From Heteronotia binoei (Eukaryota): 64,000 bases of DNA. The notes beneath the pieces are model-generated. The model searched no databases, was not told where the DNA came from, and saw only the letters and a program-made list of their open reading frames with translations. Shown one piece after another: positions 28,469-60,100 of this stretch (positions are counted from its first letter, which is position 1; each line of letters starts with the position of its first letter). The position numbers and the translations under genes were made by a program. The stretch spans positions 56,606,001-56,670,000 of the forward strand of contig NC_083239.1 in NCBI RefSeq assembly GCF_032191835.1, given 5' to 3'.

Positions 28469-31400
28469 TCACACGGCAGCTGTGGCTTCCCCCTTGCCTC
28501 CGGCTGGGGGGCTCCCTCCTCCAGCCTCCTCTGAGAAGCCCACCTGGGGCAGGTGGACTTTCTGCCCCTCCAGGCTGGCGATCTCCAGCCCCCCGCGGGA
28601 CTTGGGGCTCAGGGCCACCTTGGGGAACCTGAACTTGGGGGGCTTCTCCGCCTCTCCCGGGGCAGGCACCCCGTTCCTCTTCTTGAAGCCAGAGAAGGTG
28701 ATTTGGGGGGGCCTGAACTTGAGGGCGGCAAAAGGGCCCGGCCCCTCCGAGGGCCCCACCAGCTGGAGGCTGAGCTCCGGGTCGCTCTGGGCCACCGTGG
28801 GGGAGGGTGACGAGAGCTCCAGCTGGGGCAGGCGGATCTTGCCCAGCTTGCCATCCTCGGCCCCCTCCCCCTTGGAGAAGCCCACCTGGGGCAGCTGCAT
28901 CTTCTCCCGCCCGCCGTCCTCCTCCTCCTCCTCTTCGCTGCCTGTCTTCAGCCTGGCGAGGCCCAGCTTGAACCTGCCCATCACCCCTTTGCCACCCGCC
29001 TCCTCCTCTCCCTCCAGCAGCCCGGAAGAAGAAGAGCCCTCCGCCCCCCTCCCTTTGGGCCTGCCCAGCGCAAAAGCTGGCCTCTTGGCCTTGGCCTCCT
29101 GCCCCCCCGCCCCCTCCCCGGCTGCTTTGGGCAAGGACAGCTCGAACTTTGGGATCTTCACCTTGTACTTCCTGCCTGCCTCAGCGCTGAGGGTCTCCCC
29201 TCCGCCTCCCCCCGGACTCCTCTGGCCATCTCTTCTGCCGCCAGCCATTTCCAGCTCCTGGGAGCCCCTGCTGCGGATCTGGGCCCCCTCCACCGCATAC
29301 TCCGCGTGAGTTTTCAGGCTGGGAGCTGCAAGCTCCAGCCCAGGCACGTGGAAGGCGGCTTTCTTCCCCTCCGGGCCAGGGGGAGTGGCAGCGTCCTGCC
29401 CTCCCCTGGGGATTGACACCCCCAGTGCTGGCATCTTGATCTTGGGCACCTTCAGCCAGCCCTCGCCCTGCAGACCTTCGGCACTTGCCAGTTTCCCCGC
29501 TTTGACTCTGGCCTCCCTCTGGCCGTCCTGATCGACAGAGAAGCCCACCTCCGGGAGAGCCATCGGGGGCACGGAAGGGCAGAGGGGCTGGGTGTCTGCC
29601 CTGGGCTCCCCGCCCGCCTTGGAGAGGCTCAGGGAGGGCATCTGCAGCTTGAACTTGCTGTCGGGGCCAAGAGCGGCCCCCTCCTCCTCCCCTGCCAGAG
29701 CCACGCACAGCCCAAAGCTGCTTGGGGGCACTTCTGGGCCCAGCCTCTCAGCGCTCCCTCCAAGTTTGGGGACCTTCAGCTCTAGCTGGGGCAGGCCGGT
29801 TTCCCCCTCCCCTGCCCCCTCCCAGCTGGGGCCTCTGACTCTGGGCAGCCGGAGGCCTCCTTCCTGCTCGGGGTCTCTCGCTTGAGGGCTGCAGAACTTG
29901 GGCAGCTCCACCGAGGGCATCGGGAGGGCCTTTCCTCCCTCCCCTGGGAGCTGGGCGCTGGGCAAGGCGAGGTCCACTTGGGGCACTCGGATCTGCTCTC
30001 CCCCTCCTCCTTGGCTTGGCAGCTGCGCCTCTGCGGCCTCCCCCCTCCCAAACCTGGGCAGCTGGATCTTGGCCTCTGGCCCGACTGTGGGCAGGCGGAG
30101 GTCCAGCTCTACTTTAGGGGCCGAAAGCTGCAGGGAAGGGGCTTGGGGAACCTTCAGCTCTGCCTCGGAGGCCTCTGCCCGGGGCCTCCCTGGAGCTGGC
30201 TCCGCTTTGGTTGCCGTGCCCGGCAGGGCCATCTCCAGTGAGGGCACCTTGACCTTGAGGCTGGGGCTCTCGGCCCCCATGAGCGGGGCCTCCTCCGCTT
30301 TGGCCTCCGGGAGGCCGATCGTGGGCAGCTCCACCTGGGGGAGGAGCCCTTGGCCCAGCTCTGCCTTGGGAGAGGGCAGCTTCAGCTTAGGCAGTCTGAC
30401 CTTGGACTTCTCTTTGGGGCTCTCAGCCCCCTTTGTGGCCCTGCCCTCCCCGCTGAACAGCCCCACTTTGAACTTGGAGGCCTTGGCCCCCCGCTCGCCC
30501 AGCAGGGCCTCCCCTGTCTCCAGCTCCACGGGGCCCTCCTTGCCTCTGCCCCCCAATCTGGCCAGGGAGAACTTGGGCATCTTCCAAGGGCTGTCTGGGA
30601 GCTCCAGGGTGCCTTCTTCGTCAGGAGAGTCCGCTTTGCCCGTGGGCAGGCCGATGCCCAGCTTGGGTGCCTCAACGTCCACCGTGGGCAGCGGCAGGGA
30701 GGGGAGCTTCATCCTGCTCTCTGCCGGCTCTTCCTCAGCACTTCTTCTTCCCTCCCCTGAGGCTGGCTTGGGGCCCTCAGCATCTGCCCCCCCTTTGGGT
30801 TTGGGGAAGGAGAGCCCAAACTTGGGCATCTTCAGCTTGGGCCCTCGCTCTGCTGCTGCAGCGGCCTCGGGGGGCCCAAAGAGCTCCGTGCCCCCCACTT
30901 TCCAGGCCTTGGGGCCAGAAAGGCTGAACTTGGGGAGGGCAAATTTGGGCAGCTTCAGCTTGGCTTCTGCCTCGGGGGACTGGCCCCTCTCTGCAGCCAC
31001 CTGGGGGAGCTTCACGGCGGAGACTTCCACCGAAGGCAGCTTCAGCCCTCTGCCCTTGGCTGGCCCTTCCAATTCTGTCACGGCAGCTTCTGCGCCGTCC
31101 TCTTGGCCCAAAGCGAGGCCCACCTGGGGGATTTTGGCGACAATGTCTCCGACCCCCAGCCCCTCGGTGGCCTCCCCGCCTGGCTGCTCCGCCCTGCAGG
31201 TGGGCACGCAGATCTCGACGGCCAGCTCTTGGCTCAGGGCTTCCAAGGAAGGCACTTTCAGCTTAGCCTCGGCTCCCCCCGGGGGGTGACCAGACCCGTC
31301 GGCCTTGGGCAAGCCAAGTTCGATCCCCACTCTGGGCACATCCAGCTCCAGGGCAGGCGCAGCGGCCGGAGGGAAACTCAGCCGGGCGGCAGGGAGGGCC

Positions 31401-34400
31401 AGCTCCACCTCTGGCCTGTCCACACAGAGGCCCAACTCTGGCTTCAGCACGTGGGAGACTGTGGGAAGCTGCACTCCCAGGGGCTTGGTGGCTGGCAGGG
31501 AGAGACTCAGGGCAGGGCCCCCTCCTTTCCCAACGGCTTCGCCTTCCAGCTTCTTCGGCACGCGGGGCGGGGAGGGTGTCCCCTTGGCAGGGAGGCCGCT
31601 GCTTTTGGGGAGCGACACTTGGGGCATGTGGAGCTTGAACCGCGGCCCTTCGGTGGCCTCTTCGGGCTTCACCTCTGGGGCTGCCGGCCCCCCCAGGGCC
31701 TTTGGAAGCTGCATGTCTGCGATTTTGGGGGCGGAGATGTCGAGGGAGGGCACCTTCAGGGCAAGGCTTCTCGACTTACTCTCTGCCGGGGCCTCTCTGC
31801 CCTCTGCCCTGCGCTCCGTCAAGGCCTTGGGGCTCTCCCGCTTCCCCACAGAGAGTTCTACTTGGGGCACTCGGCTCTCCTCTTCCACCTCCACCTCTTG
31901 GGGCTTGGAGCCCAGCTTGGGCAGGCTGACCGTTGGCACCTTTATGGAGAGCTCCAGGGCCTGCATTTTTGGCTTTGGCGCCTCAGCTTCCGCCTTTCCC
32001 CTGGGCAGAGGGATCTCCACATCTACAGGAGGGAGCCCCACATCCAGGAAGGGCATCGCCGCCTTCTCCTCTGGTCCCCCCTCGGCCTTGCCCCTCCCCT
32101 TTCCTAGGACGACCCCCAGGAGGGCTGGCTTCTGCTCCGCCTCTTTGGCCTTGGGGACTCTGATCTTGGGGGCCGCTTCTGGGCTTCCCTCTAGCCCGGG
32201 AAGGCTCACGGCCACATTGGGGGCAGCCACTTCGGCCACCGGGACCCTCAGCCCCGCCAGGAGCCTCTCCGGAGGGGCCTCTGCTGCAGGGCTGCCTTGG
32301 GGCAGGACGAGCTCCACCTGGGGCAGGACGTGGCCTGCAGGGCCTTCACGGGGAGACCCTCTGCCGGGCCCCACTCTGGGCAGGGGGAGGTCGAGTTCCA
32401 CCTGCGGGGCCTGGAATCCTGCCTCCTCTTTGGGCTTCTTGCCTTTGGAGAAGGGGATGTTGAACCTGGAGGCTTTCTCCGCAGCAGCCTTTGGCGGAGC
32501 CCCATCCAGCCGCCCCGCTGCCCTCGCGGCCAGGGCCTCTTTCACCTTCAGCCGGGGGAGCTTCAGCTTGCGGCGCTTGGTCTCCAGGGAGGAGAGGAGA
32601 GGAGAGAGGTCCAGGCTGGGCTGGGCTGCTGCAGCTGCCACCTCTCCGGCACGCCTGGCCTTGCGCAGCTTGGAGAACTTGGGCAGGGAGAACTCCACGT
32701 CCACGGGGGGGCCCCCCTCCAGCTTGCTGCCCCGGGCCATGCCTTTCCCGGCCTTCTTCCCAGCCTTCGTCGTCGTCTTCTTCTTCTTCTTCCTCAGGGA
32801 GGTCAAGCTCCGGATGTTCTGGAGAAAGAAAGAGGGGCTGGGTGAGCCTGCTTGCCTGCCCAGTGGGGAGCGGGGGACTGGGTGGGTGGGAGGAGAAGGG
32901 GCCCTTGGAGTGGGTGCAGGACCCTGCTGCCCAGGTGGGGAATGCACAGGAAAGCAGCACTCTAACACAACTCCCTGGAGCGTCCCTGTCAAGGCGGGTG
33001 GAGGGCAGGCTGCTTCTTGGCATCACTGTGGCCCCACACAGACCACTCGGGGCTCCCTGGAGGGAACAGTGCTGGACCAGAGTGGGGATTGCTTTGGCCT
33101 CACGGAGACCCTTGAGCCCACCTGCACATGCTCGCTCTGTCTCTCTCTCCCCCCTCTCCCCTGCTTCACAGGGATGTTGTTGTAGGAGGAAAATGCAAGA
33201 AGGGAGCTGCCTACACTGAGCTGCTTCGGAGGAAGGGTGCGACAAAACCTCAGCAGAGGAGTAGCTTGTTGCCCCTGTCCTTTGAGCGCAGGCTGCTGTT
33301 TCCAGGTGTGAGCAGAAAGCCCCCCTGGGAAGACCATGAGCAGGGAGAGCAAAGGGCGGCCTCAGAAGGGGAACCTCCTTGGCCAGAAGCTGCTGCTGTT
33401 TTGTTCGTAAAACCTGCCTCTTTGCTGACATCCTCCAGTCCAGAGGCCGTTCAGGGATCCAATAAAAAGAGTCAACAATAAAACGCTTTTTAAAAACCCA
33501 CAGCACGGAAATCCTGAAGTTACTTTTGAAATATTGCTTGAAGAAGGCTGGCTTCAAAGCCAAGGCAACATCAGTGCCAGAGGGGGTTTCAAAGCCAGGG
33601 GGCCACCAGAATAAAGGCCTCGCTCTCTTTCTGCCAGCTTTAATCCCAGGGGAGGGGAAGCCTCTAAGGAAGATCTGTGCCCTCAGACGGGTCCATAAGG
33701 GAGACAGTCATCCCTCAGAGAGCCAAACTGGCCACAGATGCAAGTGTTTTGGGAGAGGATGGCCACGGCCTACCCCCTAGCAGCCTGGCTGCCACATTCC
33801 GAACTCTCTTCAAGGGCTGCCCTATCTACAACTCACTGCAGCTGTCAAGCAGCAAGGAATCGGGATCAGAGAATCAGACTAGGAGCTCTGAGTTCAGATT
33901 CCCTCTCTGCCATGGATGGTCTTGCCCCCCGCCCCCCAACTGGCTGGGAAGAGAAAAGAGAGGGGAGGGGGCCCACGAGAGCTGTTCCGGGTCTTCACGG
34001 GGGAGAAATGCAATGAAGTCCTTGGGCCAGTCTTCTGCAACACCACCTGGGGCCAGTGGGGGGGGGGGGTGGCAAGGAGCAGCAGCTGGGGGGCAGGAGT
34101 TCTCAGAGAGTTGCCTTCAAGGATTTCTGCGCCACTAACCAGCTTGGCCATTTTAGCTTTTGGCCCCCGCACTTCGAAAGTGGGGGCTGCGGGGCTGCGG
34201 GTCACGTCGGTGCCAGGGACAGTCCGCTTCAGCAGGAAAGAGACCTTGTAGGGCTCGGCGCTCTTGAGGATCTGCAGGGCGTCTTCATACTTCATGTTGT
34301 CGAAATAAACCCTGGCGCTCAGGAGCTGGTCACCTGCGGAGGGGGGGGGGGGAGAGGGGTTGGGCCCTCAGAAACTGGCCCCTTCGGAGCCCAACGAGAA

Positions 34401-34917
34401 CCGGAGCAAAACCCTCAAGGGCTGTGACTGGGGACCACACCTGCGACTTCTGCCTCTGAGCCACGGGCCCTCCCTGGAAAGGGGCTGCTGCAGATTTCTT
34501 TTCTTTTTTGGGGGGGGGGGGCTTGCTCAAGACCAGTCAAGTCCAGGAATTAAGCCCCTGCCCCCCTTCAGAACTGCCTAGGACTGTCAGCTCTGGGCAG
34601 GCAAATACGGAGAGGTTTGGGGGCGCCTCATGCTGTGAAGCCAATCCTCCACAGCTGCCATTCTGTCCAGGGGAACTGACCTCTGTCACCTGCAGTGGAA
34701 GGTCTCCAGGCCCCACCTGACCTGGCAGCTCTGAGGCTGTCCCCCCAGGAGCCTTACCTTCTCTGAGACTCCAGGCCTGGGCAGCCGGGGAGCCTCTCAG
34801 CACATCCTTGACAAAAAGGCCCTGCTTCCCTCCTCCAGCCACGCTCAGCCCGGTGACCCCCGCCTCGGCCTCTGTCTCCACAATGACCTCCAGGAGCTCA
34901 GACGTCCCCACGGTCTT
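28469..34917 (-). CDS. PRX: Periaxin (L-periaxin) core: PDZ exons 34758-34917 and 34140-34333, giant exon 28469-32818 (1450 codons)
   Basis: [33 protein letters not shown]...REG|[32 protein letters not shown] (PRX/AHNAK PDZ); basic NLS region LRKKKKK...[14 protein letters not shown]; many P-x-V/L-E-L type repeats; acidic stretch; C-terminus EATAAV*. Splice phases are consistent. Confidence 0.96.
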
Positions 34918-35015: not shown

Positions 35016-35162
35016 CTCCATCTTGCGGAGCTCGGCCTCCAGCCCCCCGGCAGCCCGGGCTTCCTCCTCCTCCTCCACTGCCGCCTCCTCGGAGCTGGCC
35101 CGGCTGGCCCCCTTCTTCTCCAGCACCCGCTTCAGCTCTGCATGCAGCTTCTCCTTCTGGGC
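35016..35162 (-). CDS. PRX: Putative additional in-frame PRX coding exon (AQKEKLHAELKRVL...AELRKME)
   Basis: Acceptor CCCGTCCCTTCCAG|, donor GAG|GTGAGG, 147 nt, phase 0-0, no stop; splices in frame to the PDZ exon; coding-like composition. Confidence 0.75.
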
Positions 35163-36296
35163 CTGGAAGGGACGGGGCCCGGAGGTCAGAGGTCAGGCCC
35201 TGGCCTCTCCACCCGCCTGGAGTCAGTTCCAAACCAGCTTCAATGTGGAACAGGAGGCTGCTCAACTGCTGGAGCCAGCTGCTCTGGGGCCAGACCTCTG
35301 AATCCCTCCTCCTCTGGACAGCTGCCCACCTCCCCCCAAAGAACGGAAGTGACACCACGGGGGGGAGGGGCTTGGCACCCCAGGCAGTCTTACCCATTGC
35401 CCCCCCTTGCTCTGGGTTAAGGAATCCCTCTGGGGGAGGGGCTCCGCAGGGGGTTGTGCCGCAGAGTCCCCCCTCCAAAGCAACCATTTCCCCCAGGGGA
35501 AGTGCTCCTGGTTCTCAGAAATCAGTTGCAATTCTGGGAGACCTCCAGGCCCCACCTGGAGGTTGGCAGGTTTTCCCCTCCCCCCGCCCCCGGCCAGAAA
35601 CTCACAGCTCTGTCTGGGTCGCCTCCGGCTTCCTCTGGGGAGAGGGGCAAGTGGGGGCCCGTGGGGGTCCGGACTGGGGCGGGCTGCTCATTCCTTTTGG
35701 ACTCAGCGAGCTGCAAGACGGAGGGAGGCGGGAAGAGCAGAGTCACAGCAAACCCTCCCATCCCAGGCACCACCCCCAGGACCTCACCCATCCCCAGCTG
35801 CCCCCCCCCCCCCGGCAGAGGCCTTCCCCATCCCCTCCTGCCTGGCCCTTGTCGCTGGAGGAGCTGCTGGGGACTGAACCGGCGACCTTCTGCACACCAA
35901 GCAGAGGCCCATCTGGAGGGGCCTTCTGCTGAACCGGCCTGTCTTGTCTACGCAGGCAGAAAAGGGGCATTCCCACTCCCGACAGCCTTTCCTTTTAAAC
36001 CGGAGGTGCTGGAGACGGAAACCAGGAGGGCCTTTCTGCACCCCACGCCAAGGAAAGGGTCTTCCACGGAGCTGGACCACCAGAACAAGCCCCACTGGCA
36101 AGCTGTGGGTCAGGGATGAGTGGGGAAATAGAGCCCCCCCATGGAGAGAGTTCTGGACCCCAAGCAGCGCGTGAGGGGAGGGTGCGTGCGGACGAGCTGC
36201 CCTCCTCTCTACTTGTGCTGCAGCCACGGCTGGTATTCTGCAGCATCCAGCTCTAAGGAGGGCGATGGCTTTGCGAGGGGGGCCGTAGCTACTTAC

Positions 36297-38955
36297 AGGC
36301 GCTTGCCGTCTGGTCCTGCTCCTGCGGCCTTCTTGTACGTAGGCCTCGAAGCTGTGGAAAGAAAGAAAGAGAGGTTCCTTACCTGGACTTCTGGCTGTGC
36401 AGTGACTCCTCCTCAGTATCCTTCCACCCCCCCCCCCCACCTCCCAGTGCATTCCCTGGCCCCCAGAGGGAGCATGAGATGGATCACAGGAGGACTGGGT
36501 TGGGGGGCAGGTGGGGGGGCCTGTGGCAGGCCATGCCTACCTGGTCCTCCTAAGGCCCCTGTGATGCACGGACCGGTCAGCTTCCTCGTGCCACCGGGGG
36601 CCAGAATCAGAAGAGGCCCTCTGTGCCCCCCCACCCCATGCCACAGCGCTGGCAAGAGAAGAGCCCTGCCGGGTCAGGCCTCTGCTTTCCAACACGAGCT
36701 CCACAAAAACGCACCAAGGAGGCCCACTGGCTCCCTCCGCGCTCCCAGGCTGCAGCAGCTGCTCTGCCCAGGTAGACTGCCCCTGAATAAGGAGGCACCA
36801 GCAGGCCTCTTCCCTTCTCTCTCTGCTGGCAACCCTGCCCAGCCCCCAGCAAGAGCCAGCGGCCTCTCAGGCCCTCTCCCTCCTCGAGAATGGGCAGCAT
36901 TTCATTCCCACGCTCACTGGGGCTCCAAAGACCCACACCATGCCGTGGCATTCCCCAAAAGGTCAAGGCTCCGCACTGCACATTCCCAGCCCCTGGCAGA
37001 CAAAAGGACGCTGCGTCCGGGCAGAGCCCGCGGGGACATAGCTGGCATTCTGGGCCCCGGTCCCAGACACCTCCTCAGAGCGCTACTGGAGCACAGGCTG
37101 GCTCCAGGTCCCAGCCACCCCACAGCCCCCTCCCTCACCAAAAGCTCCAGCAAGAGTTTCAGGGCTTGGGCTTTGTCTGCTGTGGGGCTTACCTGCTCCC
37201 ACTCGAAGAGCAGCAGCGGGGGTGGGGGGGCTACATCTGGGTGGGTGGAGAAAAGGAGGGTCATGGGATCACCCAAAGGACAGAAGGTGCTTTTCCACAA
37301 GCTGCTGCTCTCTGGCTGTAATCAGTCAATGGCCGGGCGCAACAGTCGCAAAAAGGGGCGCTCAGGTACTGGTCACCCAGGAGTGGTTGGGAAAGATCCC
37401 CAGGCCCAGCCTCTGCCTTTCCCAGGTCTGGAGGAAGAGCTGCTGGGCAAGGCCCTCTGGAGCCAGAAGGGGACCAAGGGGCAGAAGGTGGCTTCCTTCC
37501 TTCCAGCGTCCACTGGTGGACTCCCCGGAAGCCTTGGCCAGACCCAGCATGCTCTTGGGCACTGGTCTGCAGGTGCTCCAGAAGCAGGAAGGAAGCAGCG
37601 CAGTGACCCTCTGGCTCATGAGGATTCAGCCCCCAGCTCAGCGGCTCCCTGCACCCCGGTGGGTGGGGGCACCTGCAAGAGGGGGCTTCCCCACCCAGTC
37701 CTGGGCAGGTGGGGGCCCTTGGAGGGCTGCAGGTGAGAGCAGAAGGAATTTCTCCTGCCTGACGCCCCCCCGCCATGAATGCAGCAGAGCAGCTCCCACT
37801 CCCCTGCAGACAATCAGCAGCTTGTTCCCCTCCAGCCTCCTCCCTCGGCCTGGCAGGAGTGCAGTGGGGATGCCAGGCATTCTGTTGGCTCAGCAGCAGG
37901 CAGGAGCTGCCCCTCTGCAAGGGGGCCGGGCCGGAGGAGCAACCGAGGCAGGTGGGCATCCCGAAGGCCCCGGCCAGAGACTCCACATCCTCCAGAAGCA
38001 GCCAGGCATCGAGGGCAGCCTCTGCCCCCCCAGCCGCTGTGCAAGAGCAGATGGGACCCTCCCAGGTCTGACCCCATAGAGCCCCTCACTGCCCTCTGGA
38101 AGCTCCAGGCACAGAAGGCCAGCTCCAGAGGAGGAGCTGTAGCCATCTCCTGTAGCAAAGCAAAACTCAAGTCCAGGCTACCGACATTTGTGCCCAAACT
38201 CCCTTTACCAGACCCAGGCTGGCTTCTGCCCCCTTCTCTCCCTTCCCATCTGTCTCTCCGAGGCCTGCAGAGGGCAGCTGCCAATCCCACCCAGGCCTAC
38301 CCAGGGGTCAGCCCTGCTCTGCTCAGTGGGTCTTACAGCCCAGGATGCACACATGGGATTGCAGCCCTGATTGCAGCGGTTAGGGGCCTGACTTCAACAC
38401 CCCCCCCCCACAGCTGCCCCAGAAGACTCCCTCGCGCTTGCCACTCTCTCAGCCAAATGTCCCACCCAGGGATGTCGCGAGGGCCAGGGCAGAAGGGAGG
38501 CTGCTGTGAGCTCCTTGGGAGGGGAGGGGAGGGGGTAGGATGTGCCTGAGAGGTGGCTTGCTCTCTGGGTGATCCCGCAAGTGCCAGCACAGGGAAAGGC
38601 AGCGAGGGGCCCATCCCCACAGCAGCTCCAGATGCTGCGCATTTTGTCCCACAAAGAAGCAGCCAGGCAGGCAGTGCGGAAGGGCCAAGAGCGGGCACTC
38701 CCCCCCCCCCGCCTGAGGCTGCCTTCATTCGCACCCTGCACCTCGCCATGCCAGGCTAGAGCCAGCCCAGCCACTAAAAAACCAAGCTGGAAGGAGGCAG
38801 GAAAGTCCCAGGATCTGAAGGTGGGGGGAGGGGGGGAGAGTCCAGCCTCAGGAAGCCAGGAAGGAGCGGCCGAGAGCCTCCCTGAAGCCAAAGGGAAGTC
38901 CAAGGCAGGCGTGGGCCCCACCCAAGGATGAGACCCCCCCCCACACACACACATG
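36297..38955 (-). CDS. Putative upstream coding exons of a long PRX isoform: 36297-36351, 36383-36455, 36541-36648, 37193-37236 or 37193-37315, about 37380-38264, 38337-38955
   Basis: Canonical GT-AG boundaries with mostly compatible phases and protein-like translations. Continuity needs single-base corrections in G/C runs, and one predicted intron is only 31 nt. No homologue recognised. Confidence 0.4.
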
Positions 38956-40900: not shown

Positions 40901-42479
40901 AGCCTTGTTGTGCAGGGAGAGGAGGGCGAGGAAGGCAAATATAACACACACACACACACATGTCTTGAGGCCCACTCCTCAAGCTCGCCAGGCCCCCTGC
41001 CAGCAGCTGCTCCACCCAGGGCAAGGGCAAAGGTGCCGCCTCCAAGGCTGTGTGGGCTGGGGGCAGCCGTGGGTGGGGGCCGTTCAGGGCTGAAGGGCAG
41101 GAGTGCCCCCCCCCCCCAGAGCATCTTTGGCCCCAAGGGGCTTCTTCGCCTTGCTGCTCTTGCCTGTCACTGCAGCCACGTAATCCGATCCACGTGGGAA
41201 AGGGGCCCAGAGGATCATCGGCCCAGCCAAGAGGTTAAAGAGCTGGTCGAGAGGTCCAGACCGAGGCCTCTCTCTCACACACACACACACACACAACTGG
41301 CATCCCCTCCAGCTTCGCCTCTCTCTCCTGGGCCTTCCCTGCCTGGACTCCACCAAGTGAAACGGGAGTCCCAGCTGCACTGGGGATTCATAACAACAGA
41401 AGCCACCCCCTCCAGCAGGGTTTGTGCACATTGGAGTGCAGCCCTGCCGTGGCAGAGAGCAGGAAGAGGTTTCTGTGGCCTGGCGCTGAACCTAGCAGAG
41501 TCCTTGAGGATCTAAAGCAGCCCCCCTCCCCCCCCCCCGCCAGAGGCCCCAGAGCAAAGACCCCCCCCTCCTCTCCTGGGAACAGCCAGCAGCCCACCCC
41601 AGGGCCAGAGCCTGTTCAGGCCAGCAAAGAGGGAGACGGGGAGAAGTGCTGGAGGGGCTGCTGCAAGTGAAGGGTCCCGCCTGCCTGCCGATCCGCTGGG
41701 CCGGAGCCAACAATGCGGAGACGGAAAACAGCCATCAGCTCCTTTCCTGCTAGGACGGGGGCGGGAAAGAGAGCGAGAGAAGCCTGACATCCTCTCCAAC
41801 GCACAGGGAGTTTCAAGCAAGGAGTTGGCCATTTTGTCACAGCGCAGAGGCTGCCCCACTGGGGTGGAGGCCCCAGAGCCTGAGTGGGAGACGGGCAGGA
41901 AGGAGAAGGTCTCTGCCTCTCTCCTGGGGGGCCTGGAAGCCTGGAGCACCCCAGCTGGAGTGGCAGCCCCTCTCTTCGGGCAAGGGGTGCCCTCCTCTCC
42001 CCCCAGCGCAGCAAGGCAGTGTGGTTGTGGTGGTTCAGAGTGTTGGATGGGGAGAACCAGGTTTGAATCCTGACTCATGCCACGGGAGCTCATCACGGGG
42101 TGGCCTCCCTCGCTGGGTTGTTGTGAGGGCAAAACGGAGGAGAGGAGAAGAAGTCAGCAGCTTCGGCTCCCCCCAGGGCGAAACGGACCCAACACATCAG
42201 CAAGGGAGCCGTCCCTCTCCCTCCCGGCAGCGAAGGGGCCGCTCGCGTCTCAGCGGTGTTTTGGGGTCCTTTGGCAACTTGCAAGAAAGCAGGATTTTGG
42301 ATGGGAAAGGCTGGACGCTGGGATTGCCTATGCGAATGGCAACATGAGCTCATGATTCAAGGGCTTGATATTCTTCATGAACTGGGGGGGGGGGAGCAGC
42401 CCTCAGAAGAGCCACTGCAACCCCCCCCCCCCTCAGGCCCCGCCCGGAGTCCCCCAAGGGCTTCTCTGAGGCGGGGGGC

Positions 42480-43260
42480 GGGGCCCTTCTCCGTTGGGGA
42501 GATTTGGGGAGAGCCCCCTTGGTTGGGCTCGGCTGTGGGCCGGGCTGCAGTCGATGCCGGTCCCTGAAGCGCCCGGGCTGCCCGCTTTGCCACCGCTGGG
42601 GGAGGGGGGCAGAAGGGCGGCACGGAAGCCAGGCGGCGCTGCCCGGGGCAGGCAAGGAGCTGGGGCGGGGGCTTGTGCGCGGCCCCGCGAACGGCCAGCT
42701 GCGCCCCAGGCCCAGGGCTGCCGGAGCCCCCCAGCAAGCGGCCAGTCCCCCGCAGAGGAAGCCCAGCCTGGCCCCCCGCGGCGGAACTGCAGGGAAGGCG
42801 GCCGCCTCGCCTGGCCCGGCCCGGCCTCCCCTCCCCTCGCCTCGCCTCCCGCCGGGCTGCCCGCCTGGCTCACCTGGCCGCCGTCCGCCCTTGGCCGCGG
42901 GCCGCGCTCCCCGTGCAGCAGCAGCAGCAGCAGGCGCTGGGCAGGCCTCCGCCGCTCTGGGCAGCCGCCCTTGGGCTGCGCCGCGGGGCCGAGGAGGCGC
43001 CGGCGGGCAGGAAAGGGGCGGCCCCCGACGGCCATCCAGCCAGGCTCCAGCCCGTGGGCGCCGCGCTCGCCTGCCTCGGCCCTGCCCCACCGACAGAGGG
43101 AGGGGCGCTCCCCAGCCCTGCTCCCGCCCGGCCCTCTGCACGTGCTCAGGGGCGCCGCCGCCGCCGCCGGCCGAAGGGCTGAGCCAGCCAGGCTGCCTGC
43201 GGGGACGCCCCTAAGGCCGAGGAGCCGTGCCTGAGCGTCTGTCTGGGGAAGGCTGCACCG
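42480..43260. promoter_or_regulatory. CpG island in the PRX 5' region (possible alternative promoter or GC-rich exon)
   Basis: Very high GC and CpG density; contains a strong minus-strand donor CAG|GTGAGC at 42874/42873. Confidence 0.55.
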
Positions 43261-43386
43261 CATCTCCCCCCCACCCCCACCCCCGCTGCTCCGGTTTGCG
43301 GATGGGGACTGGCAGAGGGGCCAGGCCGGACTTCGCGCCCCCCCCCCCCCCCGAACAGGCGGAGGAGACTCCCCGCTGCTCTCTAC

Positions 43387-43921
43387 CTTTTCTCGGCTTC
43401 CAATCGCCCCCCCCCCCACGACTGACAGACAGACAGACGCCCTGTGGGGCGGGGGAACTTCCCTGGAGGGAGGGGAGAGCTTCGAGACTGGGGCTGCCCC
43501 AAGGTCACCCCAGCAGGCTGCAGGTGGAGGAGGAGGTGGGGAAGCACCGGCCTCAGCCCTGAACCACAGCACAGCTCGCCCCCCTCCCTCACGAGTGCCC
43601 CCCAGCGGCAAGCAGGCGCTGGCCGAGCAGCAGCCCACTGAAGAGGAGCAGGACCTCCCCCCCCAGCACCTGCACAAAAGGCCAAGGGGACTGGGCACAG
43701 GAGGCGGCCGGCCGGGCAGGGCACAGAGGCACCTCCCTCTCTGGGGCCCAAAGCCTACGGGCACACTCTGCAGCAGGCTGCATCTTTTCCTGGGCCAGAA
43801 CTGACTGAAAGGGGAAGCAATCCCCCTCCCCCCAGGGATTGGCTGCCTCTCTGGGCCCCCTACCTGAGTGGGCCGCTGGGGACCAGGAGACCCCAAACAC
43901 CCTGGCGAAGCAGTCACACAT
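43387..43921 (-). CDS. Putative first coding exons of an AHNAK2-like PRX isoform: 43864-43921 (MCDCFARVFGVSWSPAAHS), 43593-43669, 43387-43517
   Basis: ATG with A at -3; MCDCF start; donor CAG|GTAGGG (phase 1). The next exons have pyrimidine-tract acceptors and compatible phases (1 to 0, then 0). Same strand as PRX and upstream of it. Confidence 0.55.
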
Positions 43922-46492
43922 CCTTCCTGCCGCTGGGGCTGGGCTGGGGCTTCCTGGCTCTGCTCCGGGCTAAAGACCCTGCCCTGCGTGTGCCCCAGAG
44001 TGAAAGGCAGCCAGCCAGCCGGCCGGCAGGATTAGAGCAAACCCTCCATCAGCAGTTTGGGCAGCCTCTGAAAGCCCCCGGGCATTGTTGGGCTGGAGGG
44101 CAGGAGGGCCAGGCTGGGAGAGACAAAGGCAGGCCGCAGCCGCCCCTCTCGCTGGCTCCCCTGCAGGGGTGGGGGGCTGAGCCCTCAGGAAGAGGAGGCA
44201 GCCTGGGCAGAGGAGGGGGGCCGAGTGCAGCAGGAGCCACAGCAGGCACCCTGAGAAGGTGGAGCCCACCAGGCGAAGTCAAAGGGCAGCACTGAGCCAG
44301 CCCAGTGGAGGGACACCATTTCCACGAGGACCAGCCGCATGCACGCTCTCTTTTTAAAAAAGTGCATTGGCTGGTGATTCTCTTGCAACCGGCCCTGAAG
44401 TATTTCCACGTCCCGAGAGCACCAGCCGCTCCGATGCCGCCAGCCGCCTGACTCCTCCCACTCGTAACACTTCCAGAGTTTTAGAGTTCTGCACTAATTA
44501 GTAATATTCTCCTCCAGTGAGCTCAGGGGAGCCACGGCAGCCTTTTCGTGGCTGGTTCTGCAGCCGTCATTTTGTGGCAGCCTCTTGTGGCTGTGCCCAC
44601 CCACCTGAGCCAGGATGCCAGAAGTGCCCACAGGCTCAAAAAGGCTGTTGTGTAAAACCCTCCAACATTTACTGAGAATCACATGGAGCCAAACCCAAGA
44701 ATTGCAGCCCAGAATAAGGGGGGCGGGAGGAGGAGCCCTGTGCCCTGAAAAGCCAGAGGCAGGCCTGCCTTCTCCCTTCCCAAGAGCACCCAAAGCACCA
44801 GGAATTGGAAGCAGCTCTTCCTCTCCAGGGTCTGGGCCACAAAGGAAGGATGGCAAGCGGGGGGCTGCTGTTCCTCTTTCCTGGGAAGCCTTGCAGGGTG
44901 TGGTGTGTGGTGAGGCAGCTGCCTCTCAAGGAGGGGGACTGGGTTCCCCGCCCCGTGGCGACCCTCATGGGAGTGGGGGAATCCTTCTGGTCAACTGCAG
45001 GGCGGGCGCTGTGGGGCTCTGTGCCGTGGGGGCAAGGAAGCTGGTTCCAGAGATAGACGTGGGAAGCTTGGAGAAGAGGTCAGGATATCCTCCTGCCTGG
45101 TTTCCTTGTGGTGAGGCGTGGGTGGGGCAAGCCCCACACCCACCAGCCAGCAGGTGCCCCCCCCCCAGGAAGCTTCTGCTGCAGGGGGCAGCTCGGAACA
45201 TTCTCAGGGCAGCCCCCTTTACTATCACGGACTGCAGGGGGGGGGGGGCTGGAGGCAGAAGGGGGCAGACCCACTCCATTTCCAGACTGGCCAAAGAGCA
45301 CCCCAGGCTCTTGGAATCAGTTGACCAGAACAAGGACATCATAGTAGGGCTCATGCTGGCTGGGAGAAGGCTCTGGGGGGACAAGCCACACCCTTTCGGC
45401 CACAGGCCTGCCACCGCCCCTCACCCCTGGAGTGGGGGGACAACCACACAGTCAGGGGGTCTTCAAAGGAATGGGGGGCAGTTGGGAGTTCCTCAGCAGC
45501 GGCAGTTCTTCAGAAGCCTCTCGCCAAACAGCTGGGATGAGAAAGGGGACTTGGATATTCAAAGTGTTTTTTCCCCCTCAAGAAGCCCCACCCCCTCCCT
45601 AAATATGGAGGAACTCCGTGGAGGTCCCTCTGGAAGCCCAAACCTGCTCGCAGCAGACATAGTTTCGGGGGGGGGGGGGGGCGGTGTCCAGATTCCCTCA
45701 CCAGAATCAGGGTGATGCTAATGCCAGGAGGGAGAGCCTTGAGTGGTCAGAATTGGGGGGGGGGGGGAAGGGGTGTATTGGATCTTAAAAAAAAAAAAAA
45801 GATTGTTGTGGTTCTAAGTTAAAATGTTTCCCCCCACCGCCACCCTTTCCTCCCTGTTGGCAACTTATGATTCTTGGGATGGGTTCTGTCCGCTTCCAAA
45901 GGAAAAGAGCCTTTGCTCCACAGAATGAAAGCTCTCCCCTGGGGCCTGATGCCCACCAGCGCTGCCCCCCCAGGGCCCCCCTTGCAAGCCTCTCTTCTGC
46001 TTTGGCCGACAGGATGGCAGCTGCGCCCTCTTGTGGCAGTGCCAGAGACCGTGCCTGGCAGCTTTGCCCCTTCGGCTGCCCTGAGCCGCTCCCTGGCTGG
46101 GATACGGGGTGGCACCTTCCAGGGAGAGCGGGGCCCCAAGAACTGGGCAGACAGGAATGGGGAGAAGAAGGAAACACCCCTTGAGTCGCAGGCTCCCAGC
46201 AAAAGGCACACTTGGAGTGGAGGAGAAAATGTGCCCATCTAGAAGGCTCAGCTGCAGCCAGTTCCTCGCAGCAGGTGCTCACTCCCTTTCCCAGGCCGAC
46301 CTCAGCCAGAGCCCTCCAGGCCTGGCCCAGGCTATGTCCTCCCCACCCCCACACAGGCGCTCAAAATCAGCTGCCTTCTGCCCGGCCCACTGGATGGAGG
46401 GGCGTGGAGGAGGGATATTGAGTACATTTGTCTGCTTCTTTCCCTTTCCTCTTGGTCTCAGGCGGCTGACAAAAACAGTTAAAACATCCCCA

Positions 46493-46708
46493 GCCAACAT
46501 TCCCTCGAAGCTGCAGTCTTGTGAGCAAAAATTCTACTTTGTGAGCTACTGGCAATAAAGTTGGGAGCAACTGGCATTAAAGTTGGGAGCTATTGCATAA
46601 ATTAGTTTGCTCTGGGGCCATTTTTCCTGAGCTGAGACAGAAATGTGTGAGCTGGAGGCTAAAAAATTGTGAGCTAGCTCACACTCACTCAGCTTAGAGG
46701 GAACACTG
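46493..46708. mobile_element. Short hAT-like MITE
   Basis: Degenerate terminal inverted repeats (CA..TTCCCTC(G/T)AAGCTG ... CAGCTTAGAGGGAACACTG); homologous to 300-478. Confidence 0.6.
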
Positions 46709-47184
46709 GTTAGAACCAAAGATGCAATCCCCAGTCCCCAATCCCTCCCCTCTTCCTAAAAGGTGCCCGCTTCTCAAAGCCCTGCCAAACAGGCCATGCA
46801 ACACCTCCTGAAGGTCTCCAAGGAGATGCCATGGAGTGGAAGCCCTGGTGGGGGGGGACAGACCCCCCGCCCTCCATAGTGGGGTAGCACTACTGACCCA
46901 GTCTCGTGAGTGCCTGCAGGAGTCTGCCACCTTCCCTTCCAGAAAATGTTTGGAATATCAACTTCAGAATTTGCTAAATGATCCAGCCTCTTCCTGCGAA
47001 GCATCCAATTCCCTGAACCCTCCATCTGTGATGGAAATCCCACCTTCCCACCACACTGCCTGCCTGGGCTCAAACCAGCCCGCCCAGCACTGCTGTTCCA
47101 TGAAGGGAACCTGGACTCTCGAAAGAAAGCTGACGCCAGAAAAAAAATTGTTGGTCTGGAACTGAACTGTTTCTGGACCCCACT

Positions 47185-51864: not shown

Positions 51865-52455
51865 TCACGACTCCTCGGCTCCCAAGAGGAGGTAGTCCAA
51901 GTCCGGCAGGTCCTGCCTGCCCCCCTCGGTGCCAGAGCAGGCCTCCTTGCTGGGGGGGCCCCAGTCGTACATGGAGGTGTCAATGTCCTCAAAGACGCCC
52001 TCCAGGCCCTCCTGCAGCAGGGCCACCCCGGGGCCCAGGAGATCCAGTGGGGCCGGCCGGGTGGGCTCCGGGCTCAGCAGGAGGTCTTCGGGCTGGGCCG
52101 TGGGCGGGCACAGGGGGTCGCTGAAGCTGCCCGTGCTGGCCAGGTCCTCCAGAATGGAGGAGAAGGTGGAAGGGTCCATGCCCGAGAGCAGCAGCTGGTC
52201 CACGGGGGCGAGGAGAGGCGGCAGGGCAGGTCTCGGGGAGCTGCTCACCGGGGGCTGCTGGGGCTCCATCTCCTCCTGGATGCGTCGGAGGGTGTTGGCC
52301 ACCAGGACCAGGTGGCGGAGGTCGGGCTCCCCCCGCTGCAGGCTCCGGTGCAGCTTGGAGAGGGAGATGCTGAAGAGGGCGCTGGAGGGCAGGGCCGAGG
52401 CAGCCTCCTCCTCCTCCTCCTCGCTCCGCTTGCGCTTCTGCCCTTTGCCCAGCAT
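51865..52455 (-). CDS. SERTAD1: SERTA domain-containing protein 1 (TRIP-Br1)-like, 196 aa, single coding exon
   Basis: MLGKGQKRKRSEEEEE start, SERTA core SKLHRSLQRGEPDLRHLVLVANTLRRIQ, GLEGVFEDIDTSMYD and LDYLL acidic C-terminus. Acceptor 4 nt before the ATG (52459); non-coding exon donor ACG|GTGAGC at 52834. Confidence 0.9.
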   Translation of the reverse strand: MLGKGQKRKRSEEEEEEAASALPSSALFSISLSKLHRSLQRGEPDLRHLVLVANTLRRIQEEMEPQQPPVSSSPRPALPPLLAPVDQLLLSGMDPSTFSSILEDLASTGSFSDPLCPPTAQPEDLLLSPEPTRPAPLDLLGPGVALLQEGLEGVFEDIDTSMYDWGPPSKEACSGTEGGRQDLPDLDYLLLGAEES

Positions 52456-52649
52456 CCTCCTGCAGGGAGGGAGGGAGGGAGGGAGAGGAGGGTCAGACGG
52501 CTCTGCTCCCATTGCATCAGGCAGCCGCAGAACAGAGGCAGCGTCTCCACGCAGAGGGGCACCCCAGATCGCCTTCCTCCCCGCCATTGCAAAGCCATGC
52601 CGGGGCACAACCCCCCTCCCTCCCCTCCGAGAGCGGGCCAGGAAGGAGG

Positions 52650-57100: not shown

Positions 57101-60100
57101 TTTGCCATTGCCTTCCCCAGTCCTCTACACCTTCCCCCCCCAGCAAGCTGGGGACTCATTTAACTGACCTCGGAAGGATGGAAGGCTGAGTCAACCTGGA
57201 GTCGGCTACCTGAACCAGCTTCCGCTGGAATTGAACGAAGGTTGTGAGCAGAGCTTAGGACTGCAGTACTGCAGCTTTACCACTCTGTGCCATGGGACAA
57301 GTTGGTAAATGAGGTTTGGATCCTGTTACTGTTTGGTGGATCAGTAACTGGCTGACAGAACACACCTAAAGAGTGCTTGGGAATGGTTCCTCATCCTCTT
57401 GGAGAGAAGTGACAAGTGGAGTGGCTCAAGGATCTGTCCTGGGGCTTCTTTTGTTCAATACCTTTATAAATGATTTGGACGAAGGAATAGAAAAGGAATA
57501 GAAATTTGCAGATGATACTAAATTGGGAGGGGTTGCAAATATGGCAGAAGACAGAGTCAGGATACGGGATAATCTTGACAAACTGGAAAAAAGGACTAGA
57601 ACAAATAAAACGAATTTTAACAGGGATAAATGTCAAGTTCTGCATTTAGGTAGAAAAAAAATCCAATGCATCGTTATAGGATGGGAGAGACTTGCCTTGG
57701 CAGTAGTATGTGTGAAAAGGATCTAGGGGTCTTAGTGGACCATACACCGAACATGAGTCAGCAGTGTGATGCGGTGGCTAAAGAAGGCGAATGCAATTTT
57801 TGGCTGTATCAACCGAAGTATACTTTCCAGATCATGTGAGGTGAGAGACAGCTCCAGCCTCTCCCAGCCATCTCAGGCAGTGCAGCCCCTCCCTCCCTCC
57901 CCCCCCCCCCCAAAGAGCCAGACCTGCAATGTGGGGGGGCATCACGTAGACGCAGTCCAGGCCCGACTCCTTCAGGATCTGCTGCATTCGTATGTGGTCC
58001 TCGGTCAGGGGCCGCAGCTTGGCAGGGACTTTCTCCAGATCCCACATCAGGAACGCTGGGTCAGAAGGGCATGGATTCTAGTGATTAGCTCTCCCCTCCC
58101 GGTGCCCCCTACTGTGGGGCAGGCCTTTCCCCACTGCCCCTGCTGGTGCTGTGACTTGGGGGATTCCCCCCTCCCTCCATTTGAGACACCTTGAGAAAAA
58201 CAAAAGCACGAGCACAGAGAAGCATGAGAGGCAGAGCAGGCCAGAGGAAAGAGCATCCGCTGGGCTGGGGCCTTAGAGGAAAAAGGAAAGGAAAGGTCCC
58301 CTGTGCAAGCACCAGTCGTTTCCGACTGTGTGGTGACGTTGCTTTCACAGCGTTTTCATGGCAGACTTTTTTCGGGGTGGTTTGCCCTTGCCTTCCCCAG
58401 TCATCTACGCTTTCCCCCCAGCAAGCTGGGGGACTCATTTGACCGACCTCGGAAGGGTGGAAGGCTGAGTCAACCTGGAGCTGGCTACCTGAACCAGCTT
58501 CCGCTGGGATCAAACTCAGGTCATGAGCAGAGACTGCACTACTGCAGCTTTAACACTGCGCCACGGGGCTCTTGGACCTTAGGGAGCTGAGTGCAAATCC
58601 TGCTTGAGAGCAGCTGCCCCATCGCCTGCAGAACAGGAGTCTCAGCAACATGTTTCTACCCTGATGAGGCTTCTTGGCCCGGCCTCCCCCCAGGCCTGAA
58701 GTGCTGCACAGGAAGGGGGCGTGGCCGGCAGGACTCTGGGCGGGGGCTCCTCACCTGAGAGACAAACGACCACCTTGCGGATCCCGTGGGACTTCATGGC
58801 TTCCACAATGTTGCGGGTGCCTTCGGACATCATGGTGGTGGGGCCTGAGGAGCAAGGGACGGCACAGTCAGCAAAGCCCAGGGGAGAGGGAGGGAGGGGG
58901 CCTGTGGGGGGGGGGATGCTGCCGCTCATACTCAGGTCGTTGCGGGTTCCCAGGATGATGATTACGGCGTCTTGGCCCTTCACAGCCTGGCCAACCTCTT
59001 CCGGGTTCAGCACATCTCCCACGATGACGTGAGCCGGCTGGAGCTCGGGGGAGAGGCGGGCGGGGTCCCGCACCAGCACCGTCACTTGGTAGCCTGGAAA
59101 GAGGGGCAGGCCGGTTAGTGGAGGGCGGCCTCAGAGGTCAGCAGGGCCAAGTCCTGGCGAGTAGATCATGTCACAGAGGGAGGCCACGGCAAACCACAAC
59201 TGTTGGTCTCTTGCCCTGACGTGAGGCCCAGGCTGGCCTGATCTCCTCAGATCTGGGAAGCCAAGCAGGGTCAGGACACGCCCAAGGAAGTCCAGGGTTG
59301 CTAGGCAGAGAAGTGGACAATGGCAACCCCCCCCCCCCCCCCCATGAACACCTCTGGCCTTGAAAGCCCTCCGGAGGCCTGATGGCAAAAGGCAAAAATG
59401 TGAGAAACTGGAGAAGGGGTTGAAGCAGAAGTGCCAAGCAAAGGCCGCAGGCTTCTCTATGGTGGTCTTGGGCTGGTGGGGGGAGGCGAGAGGGGCTTGG
59501 GGCTCCTTTCCGGAGCACCCTTCTGAAAAGAGCGGGGGGGGCTGCAGCCAATGACTTCACAACAAGGCTCCCCCGACACAGGAGGAGAAGTGCTGTTTTG
59601 AACACGGAACCACCAGTAACACAGGCCCAGACCTAAACCTGCCGGGAGAGTGGGGGGGAGTAGGGGGTGGTGGCTGCTCCCTTGGGGGGACCCCTGCGAT
59701 GAGGCCTTCTGCCAAGGGATACCGGGGCGTGTGTGTCCCGCTTGCTTTGTTTGTCAGTTATAACTGGCTTTGGCACTTCAGGTCCCAAGCAGAAAAGGAT
59801 CTTTCTCTGCCTTGGTTCACTGAGATCTACTTACCGGAGATGGGAGAAACTGAACCCGGGTCTTTGTGTGCGCAATGCAGGTGCTTTCCCACGGTGGCAG
59901 GCAGCACCTCTCTTTGGAGCTGTGGTGTTGCTTTCAGTTGGGCTTCTATTGTTTGGCTGCGGTTTTTAAAATCCTTGGAGGGTGTGGCCACAGTGCCAGA
60001 TTTCACCCTGCGGAGGCCCCTAGGCAGTCGAAATCTTGGGGGGGGGGCCTTACAAATTATCTCAGTCTGAGTGCCAGCCCCACTGCCCATAGTGGCTCCC

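What the first reader, a model, noticed from the sequence alone, without database searches (positions are those of the whole stretch)
43864..43921. AHNAK2-type MCDCF first exon upstream of periaxin
Seen in sequence: a 58-nt minus-strand coding exon, ATG (A at -3) MCDCFARVFGVSWSPAAHS G|GTAGGG, about 9 kb upstream of the PRX PDZ exon. Candidate exons follow at 43593-43669 (phase 1 to 0) and 43387-43517 (phase 0 start), with 194-nt and 75-nt introns. Knowledge, from memory: human AHNAK2, the closest paralogue of PRX, begins MCDCFHMVLPTW with a short phase-1 first exon, whereas canonical periaxin starts at MEARS just before the PDZ. Inference: this locus keeps an ancestral AHNAK2-like N-terminus whose Cys2/Cys4 could be S-acylated, giving a membrane-anchored long periaxin isoform from a separate promoter.
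Basis: partly seen in the sequence, partly recalled or inferred. Interest (0 to 1): 0.82.

Follow-up and report, generated by a model that had tools for sequence, protein, structure and literature searches.

The report
Conserved upstream periaxin first exon, frame-broken
The 58-base MCDCF segment is the gecko copy of an ancient, already database-annotated first coding exon shared by periaxin and AHNAK2, but in this genome assembly a one-base shortfall in the next exon puts it out of frame with the rest of periaxin.

Summary
The window is the Heteronotia binoei PRX locus, with gene order SERTAD1-like, PRX, HIPK4. The exon at 43921-43864 (minus) is real. It has an ATG with A at -3, encodes MCDCFARVFGVSWSPAAHS, and ends G|GTAGGG in phase 1. 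It is the orthologue of the first coding exon of long periaxin isoforms. RefSeq already predicts these isoforms in geckos, other lizards, a turtle, frogs, a salamander, gar and teleosts. M1, C2, C4 and W13 are invariant across these proteins and across AHNAK2 from shark to mammals. A bird AHNAK2 locus has the same design: a 55-nt, phase-1 first exon.

The homologous exons are 36351-36297, 35710-35606 and 35162-35016, followed by the PDZ exon at 34917.

One result is new. Exon 2 is 55 nt here but 56 nt in Paroedura, Gekko, Eublepharis and Pogona. As assembled, the MCDCF ORF therefore shifts frame and stops after 82 codons, at 35134-35132 in exon 4. This fits the RefSeq model, which starts at MEKTVG.

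S-acylation of Cys2/Cys4 is plausible but untested. The kind of exon is already known from annotation. Interest is modest.

The parts
43922..44129 (-). Conserved upstream block, the putative core promoter and 5' UTR of the MCDCF exon
   Evidence: blastn matches window 44129-43856 to Paroedura L003 2750-3066 (74% over 322 nt), and 44090-44018 to Pogona L002 2779-2856 (81%). That it acts as a promoter is inferred.
43864..43921 (-). Exon 1 coding part: 58 nt encoding MCDCFARVFGVSWSPAAHS plus G, with donor CAG|GTAGGG in phase 1
   Evidence: Paroedura and Pogona have the same 58-nt length and phase. M1, C2, C4 and W13 are invariant in 19 PRX and AHNAK2 N-termini.
42500..43500 (.). CpG island inside intron 1 (GC 0.75-0.79, CpG observed/expected 0.63-0.68), with conserved blocks at 43204-43129 and 43084-42930
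36297..36351 (-). Exon 2, 55 nt (acceptor ttctttccacag|C, donor CCT|GTAAGT). The homologous frame reads FEAYVQEGRRSRTRRQAP. It is one base shorter than the 56 nt found in four other squamates.
   Evidence: The shortfall lies within the first 12 nt: CTTCGAGGCC here against CTGCAGAGGGCC in the others.
35606..35710 (-). Exon 3, 105 nt, encoding LAESKRNEQPAPVRTPTGPHLPLSPEEAGGDPDRA (phase 0 to 0). It is skipped in Paroedura isoforms X3 and X4.
35016..35162 (-). Exon 4, 147 nt, encoding AQKEKLHAELKRVLEKK...ELRKME. It holds the conserved helix motif, the stop of the shifted MCDCF ORF (TGA at 35134-35132) and the RefSeq start ATG (35021-35019).
34758..34917 (-). Exon 5, the first half of the PDZ domain ([20 protein letters not shown]...SLREG), phase 0 to 1
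34140..34333 (-). Exon 6, the second half of the PDZ domain
   Evidence: The exon model reproduces RefSeq P0001 exactly.
28469..32818 (-). Exon 7, the large repeat-rich periaxin exon including the stop codon

Best explanation
The segment is the H. binoei orthologue of the conserved first coding exon of the long N-terminally extended periaxin isoform. PRX shares this exon type with its paralogue AHNAK2.

In other vertebrates the exon is spliced across a 7-10 kb intron to three small exons and then to the split PDZ domain. This adds about 110 residues in three parts:
- a Cys2/Cys4 hydrophobic tip;
- a disordered Pro- and basic-rich linker;
- one conserved helix, QKEKLHAELKxVL.

The most likely role of the tip is dual S-acylation that tethers this isoform to membrane. 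This is inferred from the invariance of the cysteines and from analogy with PSD-95 and GAP-43 type N-termini.

In the H. binoei assembly all splice sites and all exons are present, but exon 2 is one base short. Translation from the MCDCF ATG therefore leaves the periaxin frame and stops after 82 codons in exon 4. As assembled, the exon would give an upstream ORF in a long 5' leader, and periaxin would start at MEKTVG.

Shown: orthology, exon map, the frame defect, and the relationship to AHNAK2. Inferred: transcription, promoter use, S-acylation, and whether the one-base shortfall is biological.
For: - Locus identity and synteny.
- Exon 1 sequence and phase.
- RefSeq periaxin isoforms beginning MC[DE]C[FL] in Paroedura, Pogona, Anolis, Lacerta, Podarcis, Lerista, Pelodiscus, several frogs, Pleurodeles, gar, zebrafish and medaka.
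- Homologous exons mapped by tblastn, with canonical splice sites.
- The model for exons 4-7 reproduces RefSeq P0001 exactly.
- Exon 2 is 56 nt in four squamates and 55 nt here.
- The spliced ORF from MCDCF stops at codon 83.
- AHNAK2 N-termini and their names.
- AHNAK2 exon 1 is 55 nt and phase 1.
- M1, C2, C4 and W13 are invariant.
- Only residues 70-95 are predicted helical with confidence.
- Promoter-side conservation and the CpG island.
Against: - No transcript data could be consulted, so use of exon 1 and of these junctions in H. binoei is inferred from orthology.
- The one-base shortfall could be an assembly error or a polymorphism of one haplotype. Exons 1-4 otherwise look intact, and pN/pS across exons 2-4 is about 0.45, the same as between Gekko and Pogona. 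Lineage-specific changes lean nonsynonymous only weakly (8:2 against 9:10, Fisher p = 0.13).
- Weak alternative sites could restore the frame: a donor at 43806 and acceptors at 36394, 36382, 36331 and 36328.
- No experiment or paper on acylation of PRX or AHNAK2 N-termini was found.
Confidence: 0.8

Rival explanations
1. One reading: an intact long periaxin isoform made by splicing 43864 to 43669-43593, then 43517-43387, and onward to the PDZ exon.
For: Both candidates have AG...GT borders, and the reading frame stays open.
Against: The frame is open only because the DNA is GC-rich. The product matches no PRX long isoform. The DNA is not conserved with Paroedura or Pogona, while the neighbouring blocks are. 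The combination ends in phase 2, which does not fit the phase-0 exon at 34917. The true homologous exons lie at 36.3, 35.7 and 35.1 kb.
Confidence: 0.03
2. The long isoform is really intact in H. binoei. On this view the missing base in exon 2 is an assembly error, a variant of the sequenced haplotype, or is bypassed by an alternative splice site.
For: Exon 1, the promoter block, all splice sites and the homologous frame of exons 2-4 are undamaged and still look constrained. One of the differences is GGG to GG, a short homopolymer. In-frame alternative sites exist.
Against: The shortfall sits in a cluster of three or four changes, not in a long homopolymer. The RefSeq model for this species has no MCDCF isoform and starts at MEKTVG. 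The alternative sites are weak, lacking a polypyrimidine tract or having a poor exon end.
Confidence: 0.25
3. The Met-Cys N-terminus works as an oxygen- or NO-sensitive Cys N-degron, as in RGS4, RGS5, RGS16 and IL-32, controlling isoform stability rather than anchoring it to membrane.
For: Cys2 is invariant. Removal of Met before Cys and the Cys/Arg N-degron pathway are established knowledge, not tested here.
Against: Cys4, the hydrophobic stretch at positions 5-11 and W13 are equally invariant, which a degron alone does not explain. An acidic residue at position 3 is, from memory, unfavourable for the dioxygenase ADO. Nothing was tested here.
Confidence: 0.1
4. A chance ORF, or an exon of a separate gene unrelated to PRX.
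For: None, beyond the short length of the exon.
Against: It is conserved at a syntenic position in three other squamates, with the same length and phase. It is joined to PRX in RefSeq models of more than 20 species. No other gene lies between SERTAD1-like and PRX.
Confidence: 0.01

Closest known systems
Predicted long periaxin isoforms in RefSeq (e.g. Paroedura picta X1-X4, Pogona vitticeps X1, Anolis carolinensis X1, Pelodiscus sinensis, Ascaphus truei X1, Pleurodeles waltl X2, Lepisosteus X1, Danio rerio X17/X18)
   Same: The first exon has the same length (58 nt where DNA was read), phase, ATG context and peptide (17/19 to Paroedura). The order of downstream exons is the same, and so is the synteny.
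   Different: In H. binoei exon 2 is 55 nt rather than 56 nt, so the ORF is interrupted. The species' RefSeq model lacks this isoform. None of these isoforms has been verified experimentally: a 2020 review lists only S- and L-periaxin as verified (PMC7072810).
AHNAK2 first exon (MCDCFH[LVM]V[LF]P.W...)
   Same: M1, C2, C4 and the Trp are invariant. Both have a short phase-1 first coding exon (55 nt in Neopelma), a very long first intron, several small exons, and then a PDZ domain split at the same ...EG|DQLL position.
   Different: This is a different gene. AHNAK2 continues with SGRQL...RPRPQGSSPVYEY and lacks the QKEKLHAELK helix. Its first exon is one codon shorter, and its synteny differs. 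The window is PRX, not AHNAK2.
Placental-mammal long periaxin models (MWGYLCSLCRPPGS...)
   Same: The first exon is positionally equivalent, begins ATGTG and ends in phase 1 (43 nt in dugong). It is followed by homologues of exon 2 (EPRTQEAQ) and exon 4 (AQRQLLHAELK).
   Different: The MCDCF motif is replaced. The cysteines sit at positions 6 and 9 and the Trp at position 2. Whether this exon is the same one after divergence was not proven.
N-terminally dually palmitoylated scaffold proteins (PSD-95 MDCLCIV, GAP-43 MLCCM); from knowledge
   Same: Two cysteines lie within the first five residues, next to hydrophobic residues, at the start of a PDZ scaffold protein.
   Different: There is no experimental evidence for PRX or AHNAK2. 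Here Cys is at position 2, directly after the initiator Met.

Membership tests
First coding exon of the long PRX isoform | Lies upstream of the PRX PDZ exons on the same strand, between SERTAD1 and PRX | tested here: met
   SERTA ORF at 51865-52608 (-), exon 1 at 43921-43864 (-), PDZ exon at 34917 (-), HIPK4 at 24689-26392 (-).
First coding exon of the long PRX isoform | ATG-initiated, 58 nt, GT donor in phase 1 | tested here: met
   Identical layout in Paroedura L003 and Pogona L002.
First coding exon of the long PRX isoform | Invariant M1, C2, C4 and W13, with a hydrophobic stretch between | tested here: met
   Alignments A1 and A2.
First coding exon of the long PRX isoform | Reads in frame through exons 2-4 into the PDZ domain | tested here: not met
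   58 + 55 nt leaves the frame, with a stop at 35134-35132. Exon 2 is 56 nt in Paroedura, Gekko, Eublepharis and Pogona.
First coding exon of the long PRX isoform | Transcribed and spliced to exon 2 | not testable with these tools
   No transcript data are available. Only conservation of the splice sites and promoter block supports it.
AHNAK2 gene (orthologue) | AHNAK2-specific N-terminal exons (SGRQL..., RPRPQGSSPVYEY) and giant AHNAK repeats | tested here: not met
   The downstream exons are periaxin-type, and the large exon is 100% identical to RefSeq periaxin.
AHNAK2/PRX shared N-terminal exon type | MC[DE]C[FL] start, Trp at position 12 or 13, short phase-1 exon | tested here: met
N-terminally S-acylated proteins | Cysteines near the N-terminus in a hydrophobic or basic context | tested here: met
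   Sequence only: MCDCFARVFGV.
N-terminally S-acylated proteins | Thioester-linked fatty acid demonstrated on those cysteines | not testable with these tools
   No relevant paper was found. This needs acyl-biotin exchange or metabolic labelling.
Cys2 N-degron substrates | Met-Cys N-terminus oxidised by ADO and arginylated | not testable with these tools
   Met-Cys is present. Suitability as a substrate is unknown.

The most novel reading that the evidence does not exclude
All jawed vertebrates keep a third, never experimentally described periaxin isoform. Its invariant Cys2/Cys4/Trp13 tip, shared with AHNAK2 since before the paralogues split, is a lipid anchor that places a PDZ-dimerising scaffold directly on the membrane. 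H. binoei has recently lost this isoform through a one-base deletion, much as placental mammals rewrote the tip to MWGYLCSLC. The gecko would then be a natural knockout of the isoform.
Probability: 0.25. Interest if true: 0.55.

Novelty: new member of a known kind. Interest (0 to 1): 0.33.

Why it matters
Periaxin is a major protein of non-compact peripheral myelin and a Charcot-Marie-Tooth 4F / Dejerine-Sottas gene. The literature treats it as starting at the PDZ domain. Database models from fish to reptiles show a longer form with an invariant dual-cysteine tip shared with AHNAK2, and no paper found here discusses it.

For this window the practical results are these:
- a corrected exon map;
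- the finding that the species' annotation lacks the exon, probably because the frame is broken;
- a concrete, cheap test (resequence 55 nt, then read cDNA) of whether a gecko lineage has lost the isoform.

The discovery itself is not new, since public gene models already contain this N-terminus.

Tried and rejected
Rejected: no homology, no conservation and the wrong phase.
- **Locus is AHNAK2 rather than PRX.** Rejected on synteny and a 100% match to RefSeq periaxin.
- **MCDCF exon in Gekko kuhli L001.** Not found, because the 10 kb flank ends about 1.7 kb short of the expected position.
- **Eublepharis L004.** Its longest model uses a different first exon (MAQTFSL...), and the 3 kb flank does not reach an MCDCF exon.
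- **Canonical ways to restore the frame** (neighbouring AG/GT sites, exon 3 skipping). None works. Only weak alternative sites remain.
- **Relaxed selection in H. binoei.** The test was underpowered.
- **Literature searches** for MCDCF, periaxin with palmitoylation, AHNAK2 with palmitoyl, and periaxin with alternative promoter gave nothing relevant.
- **AlphaFold2 on the N-terminal 235 residues** gave low confidence except for one helix, so no fold search was run.
- **Pfam on the CpG-island ORFs** (42350-43141, 42433-43917, 42494-43234) found no domain.
- **P0005 locus.** The first look-up failed because only the longest isoform is indexed. This was solved by using isoform X1.

Full report
**What the window is**

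The 1,507-codon minus-strand ORF at 32992-28469 is a periaxin-type repeat exon. Its coding part is 100% identical to RefSeq 'periaxin [Heteronotia binoei]' (P0001, 1,569 aa).

Downstream on the same strand lies a protein-kinase exon (24689-26392, Pfam Pkinase E = 5e-51). The neighbouring gene models in four squamate loci carry the same kinase. I call it HIPK4 from the known human gene order, which I recall from memory.

Upstream on the same strand is a SERTA-motif ORF (51865-52608, E = 2e-15). The gene order SERTAD1-like, PRX, HIPK4 is that of PRX, not AHNAK2.

The window contains no N.

**The observation**

On the minus strand, 43921-43864 reads ATG TGT GAC TGC TTC ... CAC TCA G|GTAGGG and translates to MCDCFARVFGVSWSPAAHS plus one base.
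- There is an A at -3.
- The nearest upstream in-frame stop is 17 codons away, with no intervening ATG.
- The segment sits at the upstream edge of a CpG island (43500-42500; GC 0.75-0.79, CpG observed/expected 0.63-0.68).

**Is it more than chance, and what is it?**

A search with the large exon returned periaxin models from about 80 vertebrates. Many of these, plus further models from a search with an N-terminal region, start with the same peptide:
- Paroedura picta: MCDCFARVFGVSWAPAADS
- Pogona: MCDCFTRVFGVSWSPAASY
- Anolis, Lacerta, Podarcis and Lerista: MCECF...
- the turtle Pelodiscus
- six frogs
- Pleurodeles
- gar: MCECFRGIFRVTW
- zebrafish, medaka and many other teleosts: MCECLRGIFRVTW

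Paroedura has five RefSeq isoforms. Four start MCDCF; they differ by skipping of exon 3 and by one extra residue (Q) at the exon 4/5 junction. One starts at the PDZ domain.

I fetched genomic DNA for Pogona (L002) and Paroedura (L003). In both, exon 1 is also 58 nt and ends G|GTAAG in phase 1. It is 89% identical to the window in Pogona, and a conserved block lies just upstream: window 44129-43856 aligns to Paroedura, and 44090-44018 to Pogona.

The segment is therefore the orthologue of a conserved first coding exon of PRX.

**The real downstream exons**

I ran tblastn with the Paroedura N-terminus and then read the splice sites.

| Exon | Coordinates (minus strand) | Length | Features |
|---|---|---|---|
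| 2 | 36351-36297 | 55 nt | acceptor ttctttccacag\|C, donor CCT\|GTAAGT |
| 3 | 35710-35606 | 105 nt | |
| 4 | 35162-35016 | 147 nt | AQKEKLHAELKRVLEKK...ELRKME |
| 5 | 34917-34758 | 160 nt | first half of the PDZ domain |
| 6 | 34333-34140 | 194 nt | second half of the PDZ domain |
| 7 | 32818-28469 | 4,350 nt | large repeat exon, includes the stop |

Joining the ATG at 35021 in exon 4 to exons 5, 6 and 7 reproduces P0001 residue for residue. This validates those junctions.

- Their product resembles no periaxin.
- The DNA is not conserved with Paroedura or Pogona, although blocks on either side are.
- They end in phase 2, which cannot join 34917.

**The unexpected point: a broken frame**

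Exon 1 ends in phase 1. The homologous frame of exon 2 (FEAYVQEGRRSRTRRQAP, which continues into LAESKRNE...) needs two bases from exon 1, not one.

Exon 2 is 56 nt and begins CTGCAGAGGGCC in Paroedura, Gekko kuhli, Eublepharis and Pogona. In the window it is 55 nt and begins CTTCGAGGCC. The net loss of one base lies in a cluster of changes within the first 12 nt.

Spliced through the canonical sites, the ORF from MCDCF reads 19 conserved residues, then an out-of-frame stretch. It stops after 82 codons at TGA 35134-35132 in exon 4, 111 nt before the RefSeq start codon. Skipping exon 3 does not help.

Only weak sites would restore the frame: a donor TCA|gtcagt at 43806, and acceptors at 36394, 36382, 36331 and 36328 that lack a polypyrimidine tract.

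This fits the fact that RefSeq gives H. binoei a single periaxin starting MEKTVG. The usual first Met of the short form (MEAQLRKME in other squamates) is CTG here.

I cannot decide whether the missing base is biological.
- Against an old loss: exon 1, the promoter block, all splice sites and the homologous frames of exons 2-4 are intact. pN/pS for exons 2-4 is 0.45 against Gekko and 0.47 against Pogona, the same as between Gekko and Pogona (0.44).
- Weakly in favour of relaxed constraint: H. binoei-specific substitutions are 8 nonsynonymous to 2 synonymous, against 9:10 for Paroedura and Gekko together (Fisher p = 0.13).

**Relation to AHNAK2**

I searched 1.84 billion representative proteins with a profile of 14 long periaxin N-termini (A1). 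Among the hits were many giant proteins that start MCDCFH. Ten were looked up by name:
- seven are 'protein AHNAK2': squirrel, kangaroo rat, Tasmanian devil, two birds, a caecilian and elephant shark;
- two teleost proteins are labelled AHNAK-like;
- one catfish protein is labelled hypothetical.

In the Neopelma AHNAK2 locus (L005) the first exon is 55 nt, encodes MCDCFHLVLPNWPGSPAS plus G, and ends in phase 1. It is followed by a 48.6 kb intron, small exons, and a PDZ domain split at ...KEG|DQLL, the same position as in PRX.

In an alignment of 19 first-exon peptides (10 PRX, 9 AHNAK2), M1, C2, C4 and W13 are invariant. So the exon type predates the PRX/AHNAK2 split. It is not 'AHNAK2-like' in the sense of being unusual for PRX.

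Placental-mammal periaxin models have a positionally equivalent first exon reading MWGYLCSLCRPPGS. In dugong it is 43 nt, phase 1, and begins ATGTG. Homologues of exons 2 and 4 follow.

**How it probably works**

Shown:
- The extension of about 110 residues consists of the invariant Cys-x-Cys hydrophobic tip, a poorly conserved Pro- and basic-rich linker, and a strongly conserved motif, QKEKLHAELKxVL.
- That motif is the only confidently predicted element: helix 70-95, pLDDT 81-84, with everything else below 50.

Inferred:
- Two invariant cysteines next to hydrophobic residues at the very N-terminus of a PDZ scaffold resemble the dually palmitoylated tips of PSD-95 and GAP-43 (from my own knowledge).
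- A reversible lipid anchor is therefore the most likely function. I put this at about 40-50%.
- A Cys2 N-degron, as in RGS4, RGS5 and RGS16, is a rival. It does not explain the invariance of Cys4 and Trp13.

No paper in the searchable library mentions the motif, or acylation of either protein's N-terminus. A 2020 review lists only S- and L-periaxin as experimentally verified, both starting at the PDZ domain (PMC7072810).

**Verdict**

The exon is real and ancient, and it belongs to PRX.

The isoform is already present in public gene models of many species. The kind is therefore known, and only its presence in this species is new.

The one new observation is that in this assembly the exon is out of frame with periaxin by one base. 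That is either a recent lineage-specific loss of the long isoform or a local sequence error. Both are easy to test.

Interest is modest. The untested lipid-anchor idea applies to the whole gene family rather than to this window.

Noticed in passing
window 36709-37105 (-): Strongly conserved non-coding block 0.4-0.75 kb upstream of PRX exon 2. It is 79% identical to Gekko kuhli, 77% to Eublepharis and 73% to Pogona. Alternative first exons of the Gekko (MGEGWP) and Eublepharis (MAQTFSL) gene models start in or near it. It is probably an internal promoter or enhancer for shorter PRX transcripts.
   Followed up: partly
window 43129-43204 and 42930-43084: Two blocks inside the intron-1 CpG island are conserved with Paroedura, and the second also with Pogona. 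No coding homology was found. Their function is unknown.
   Followed up: partly
window 35040-35042 and 35019-35021 (-): Where other squamates have the first Met of the short periaxin form (MEAQLRKME), H. binoei has Leu (CTG). The only in-frame Met before the PDZ domain is the last-but-one codon of exon 4, which is where RefSeq starts the protein.
   Followed up: yes
window 46501-46709: Interspersed repeat of about 200 bp, with more than ten copies in both orientations in the Gekko kuhli PRX/HIPK4 locus (L001). It looks like a gecko SINE.
   Followed up: no
window 21995-23209 (+): ORF with a reverse-transcriptase domain fragment (RVT_1, E = 1e-12), probably a decayed retrotransposon about 1.5 kb downstream (in the HIPK4 reading direction) of the kinase exon at 24689-26392.
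   Followed up: no
window 60000-62700: Very GC-rich stretch (0.71) with long open frames on both strands (up to 750 codons) and no Pfam match. It may be a CpG island or the first exon of another gene beyond SERTAD1-like.
   Followed up: no
L006 1501-1543 (dugong PRX): The mammalian long-isoform first exon (MWGYLCSLCRPPGS, 43 nt, phase 1) keeps two cysteines three residues apart, at positions 6 and 9 rather than 2 and 4. This may be the same exon after divergence.
   Followed up: partly
L003 (Paroedura picta PRX): RefSeq lists five isoforms, including ones that skip exon 3 and ones that differ by a single Q at the exon 4/5 junction. The N-terminal extension is therefore itself alternatively spliced.
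   Followed up: partly
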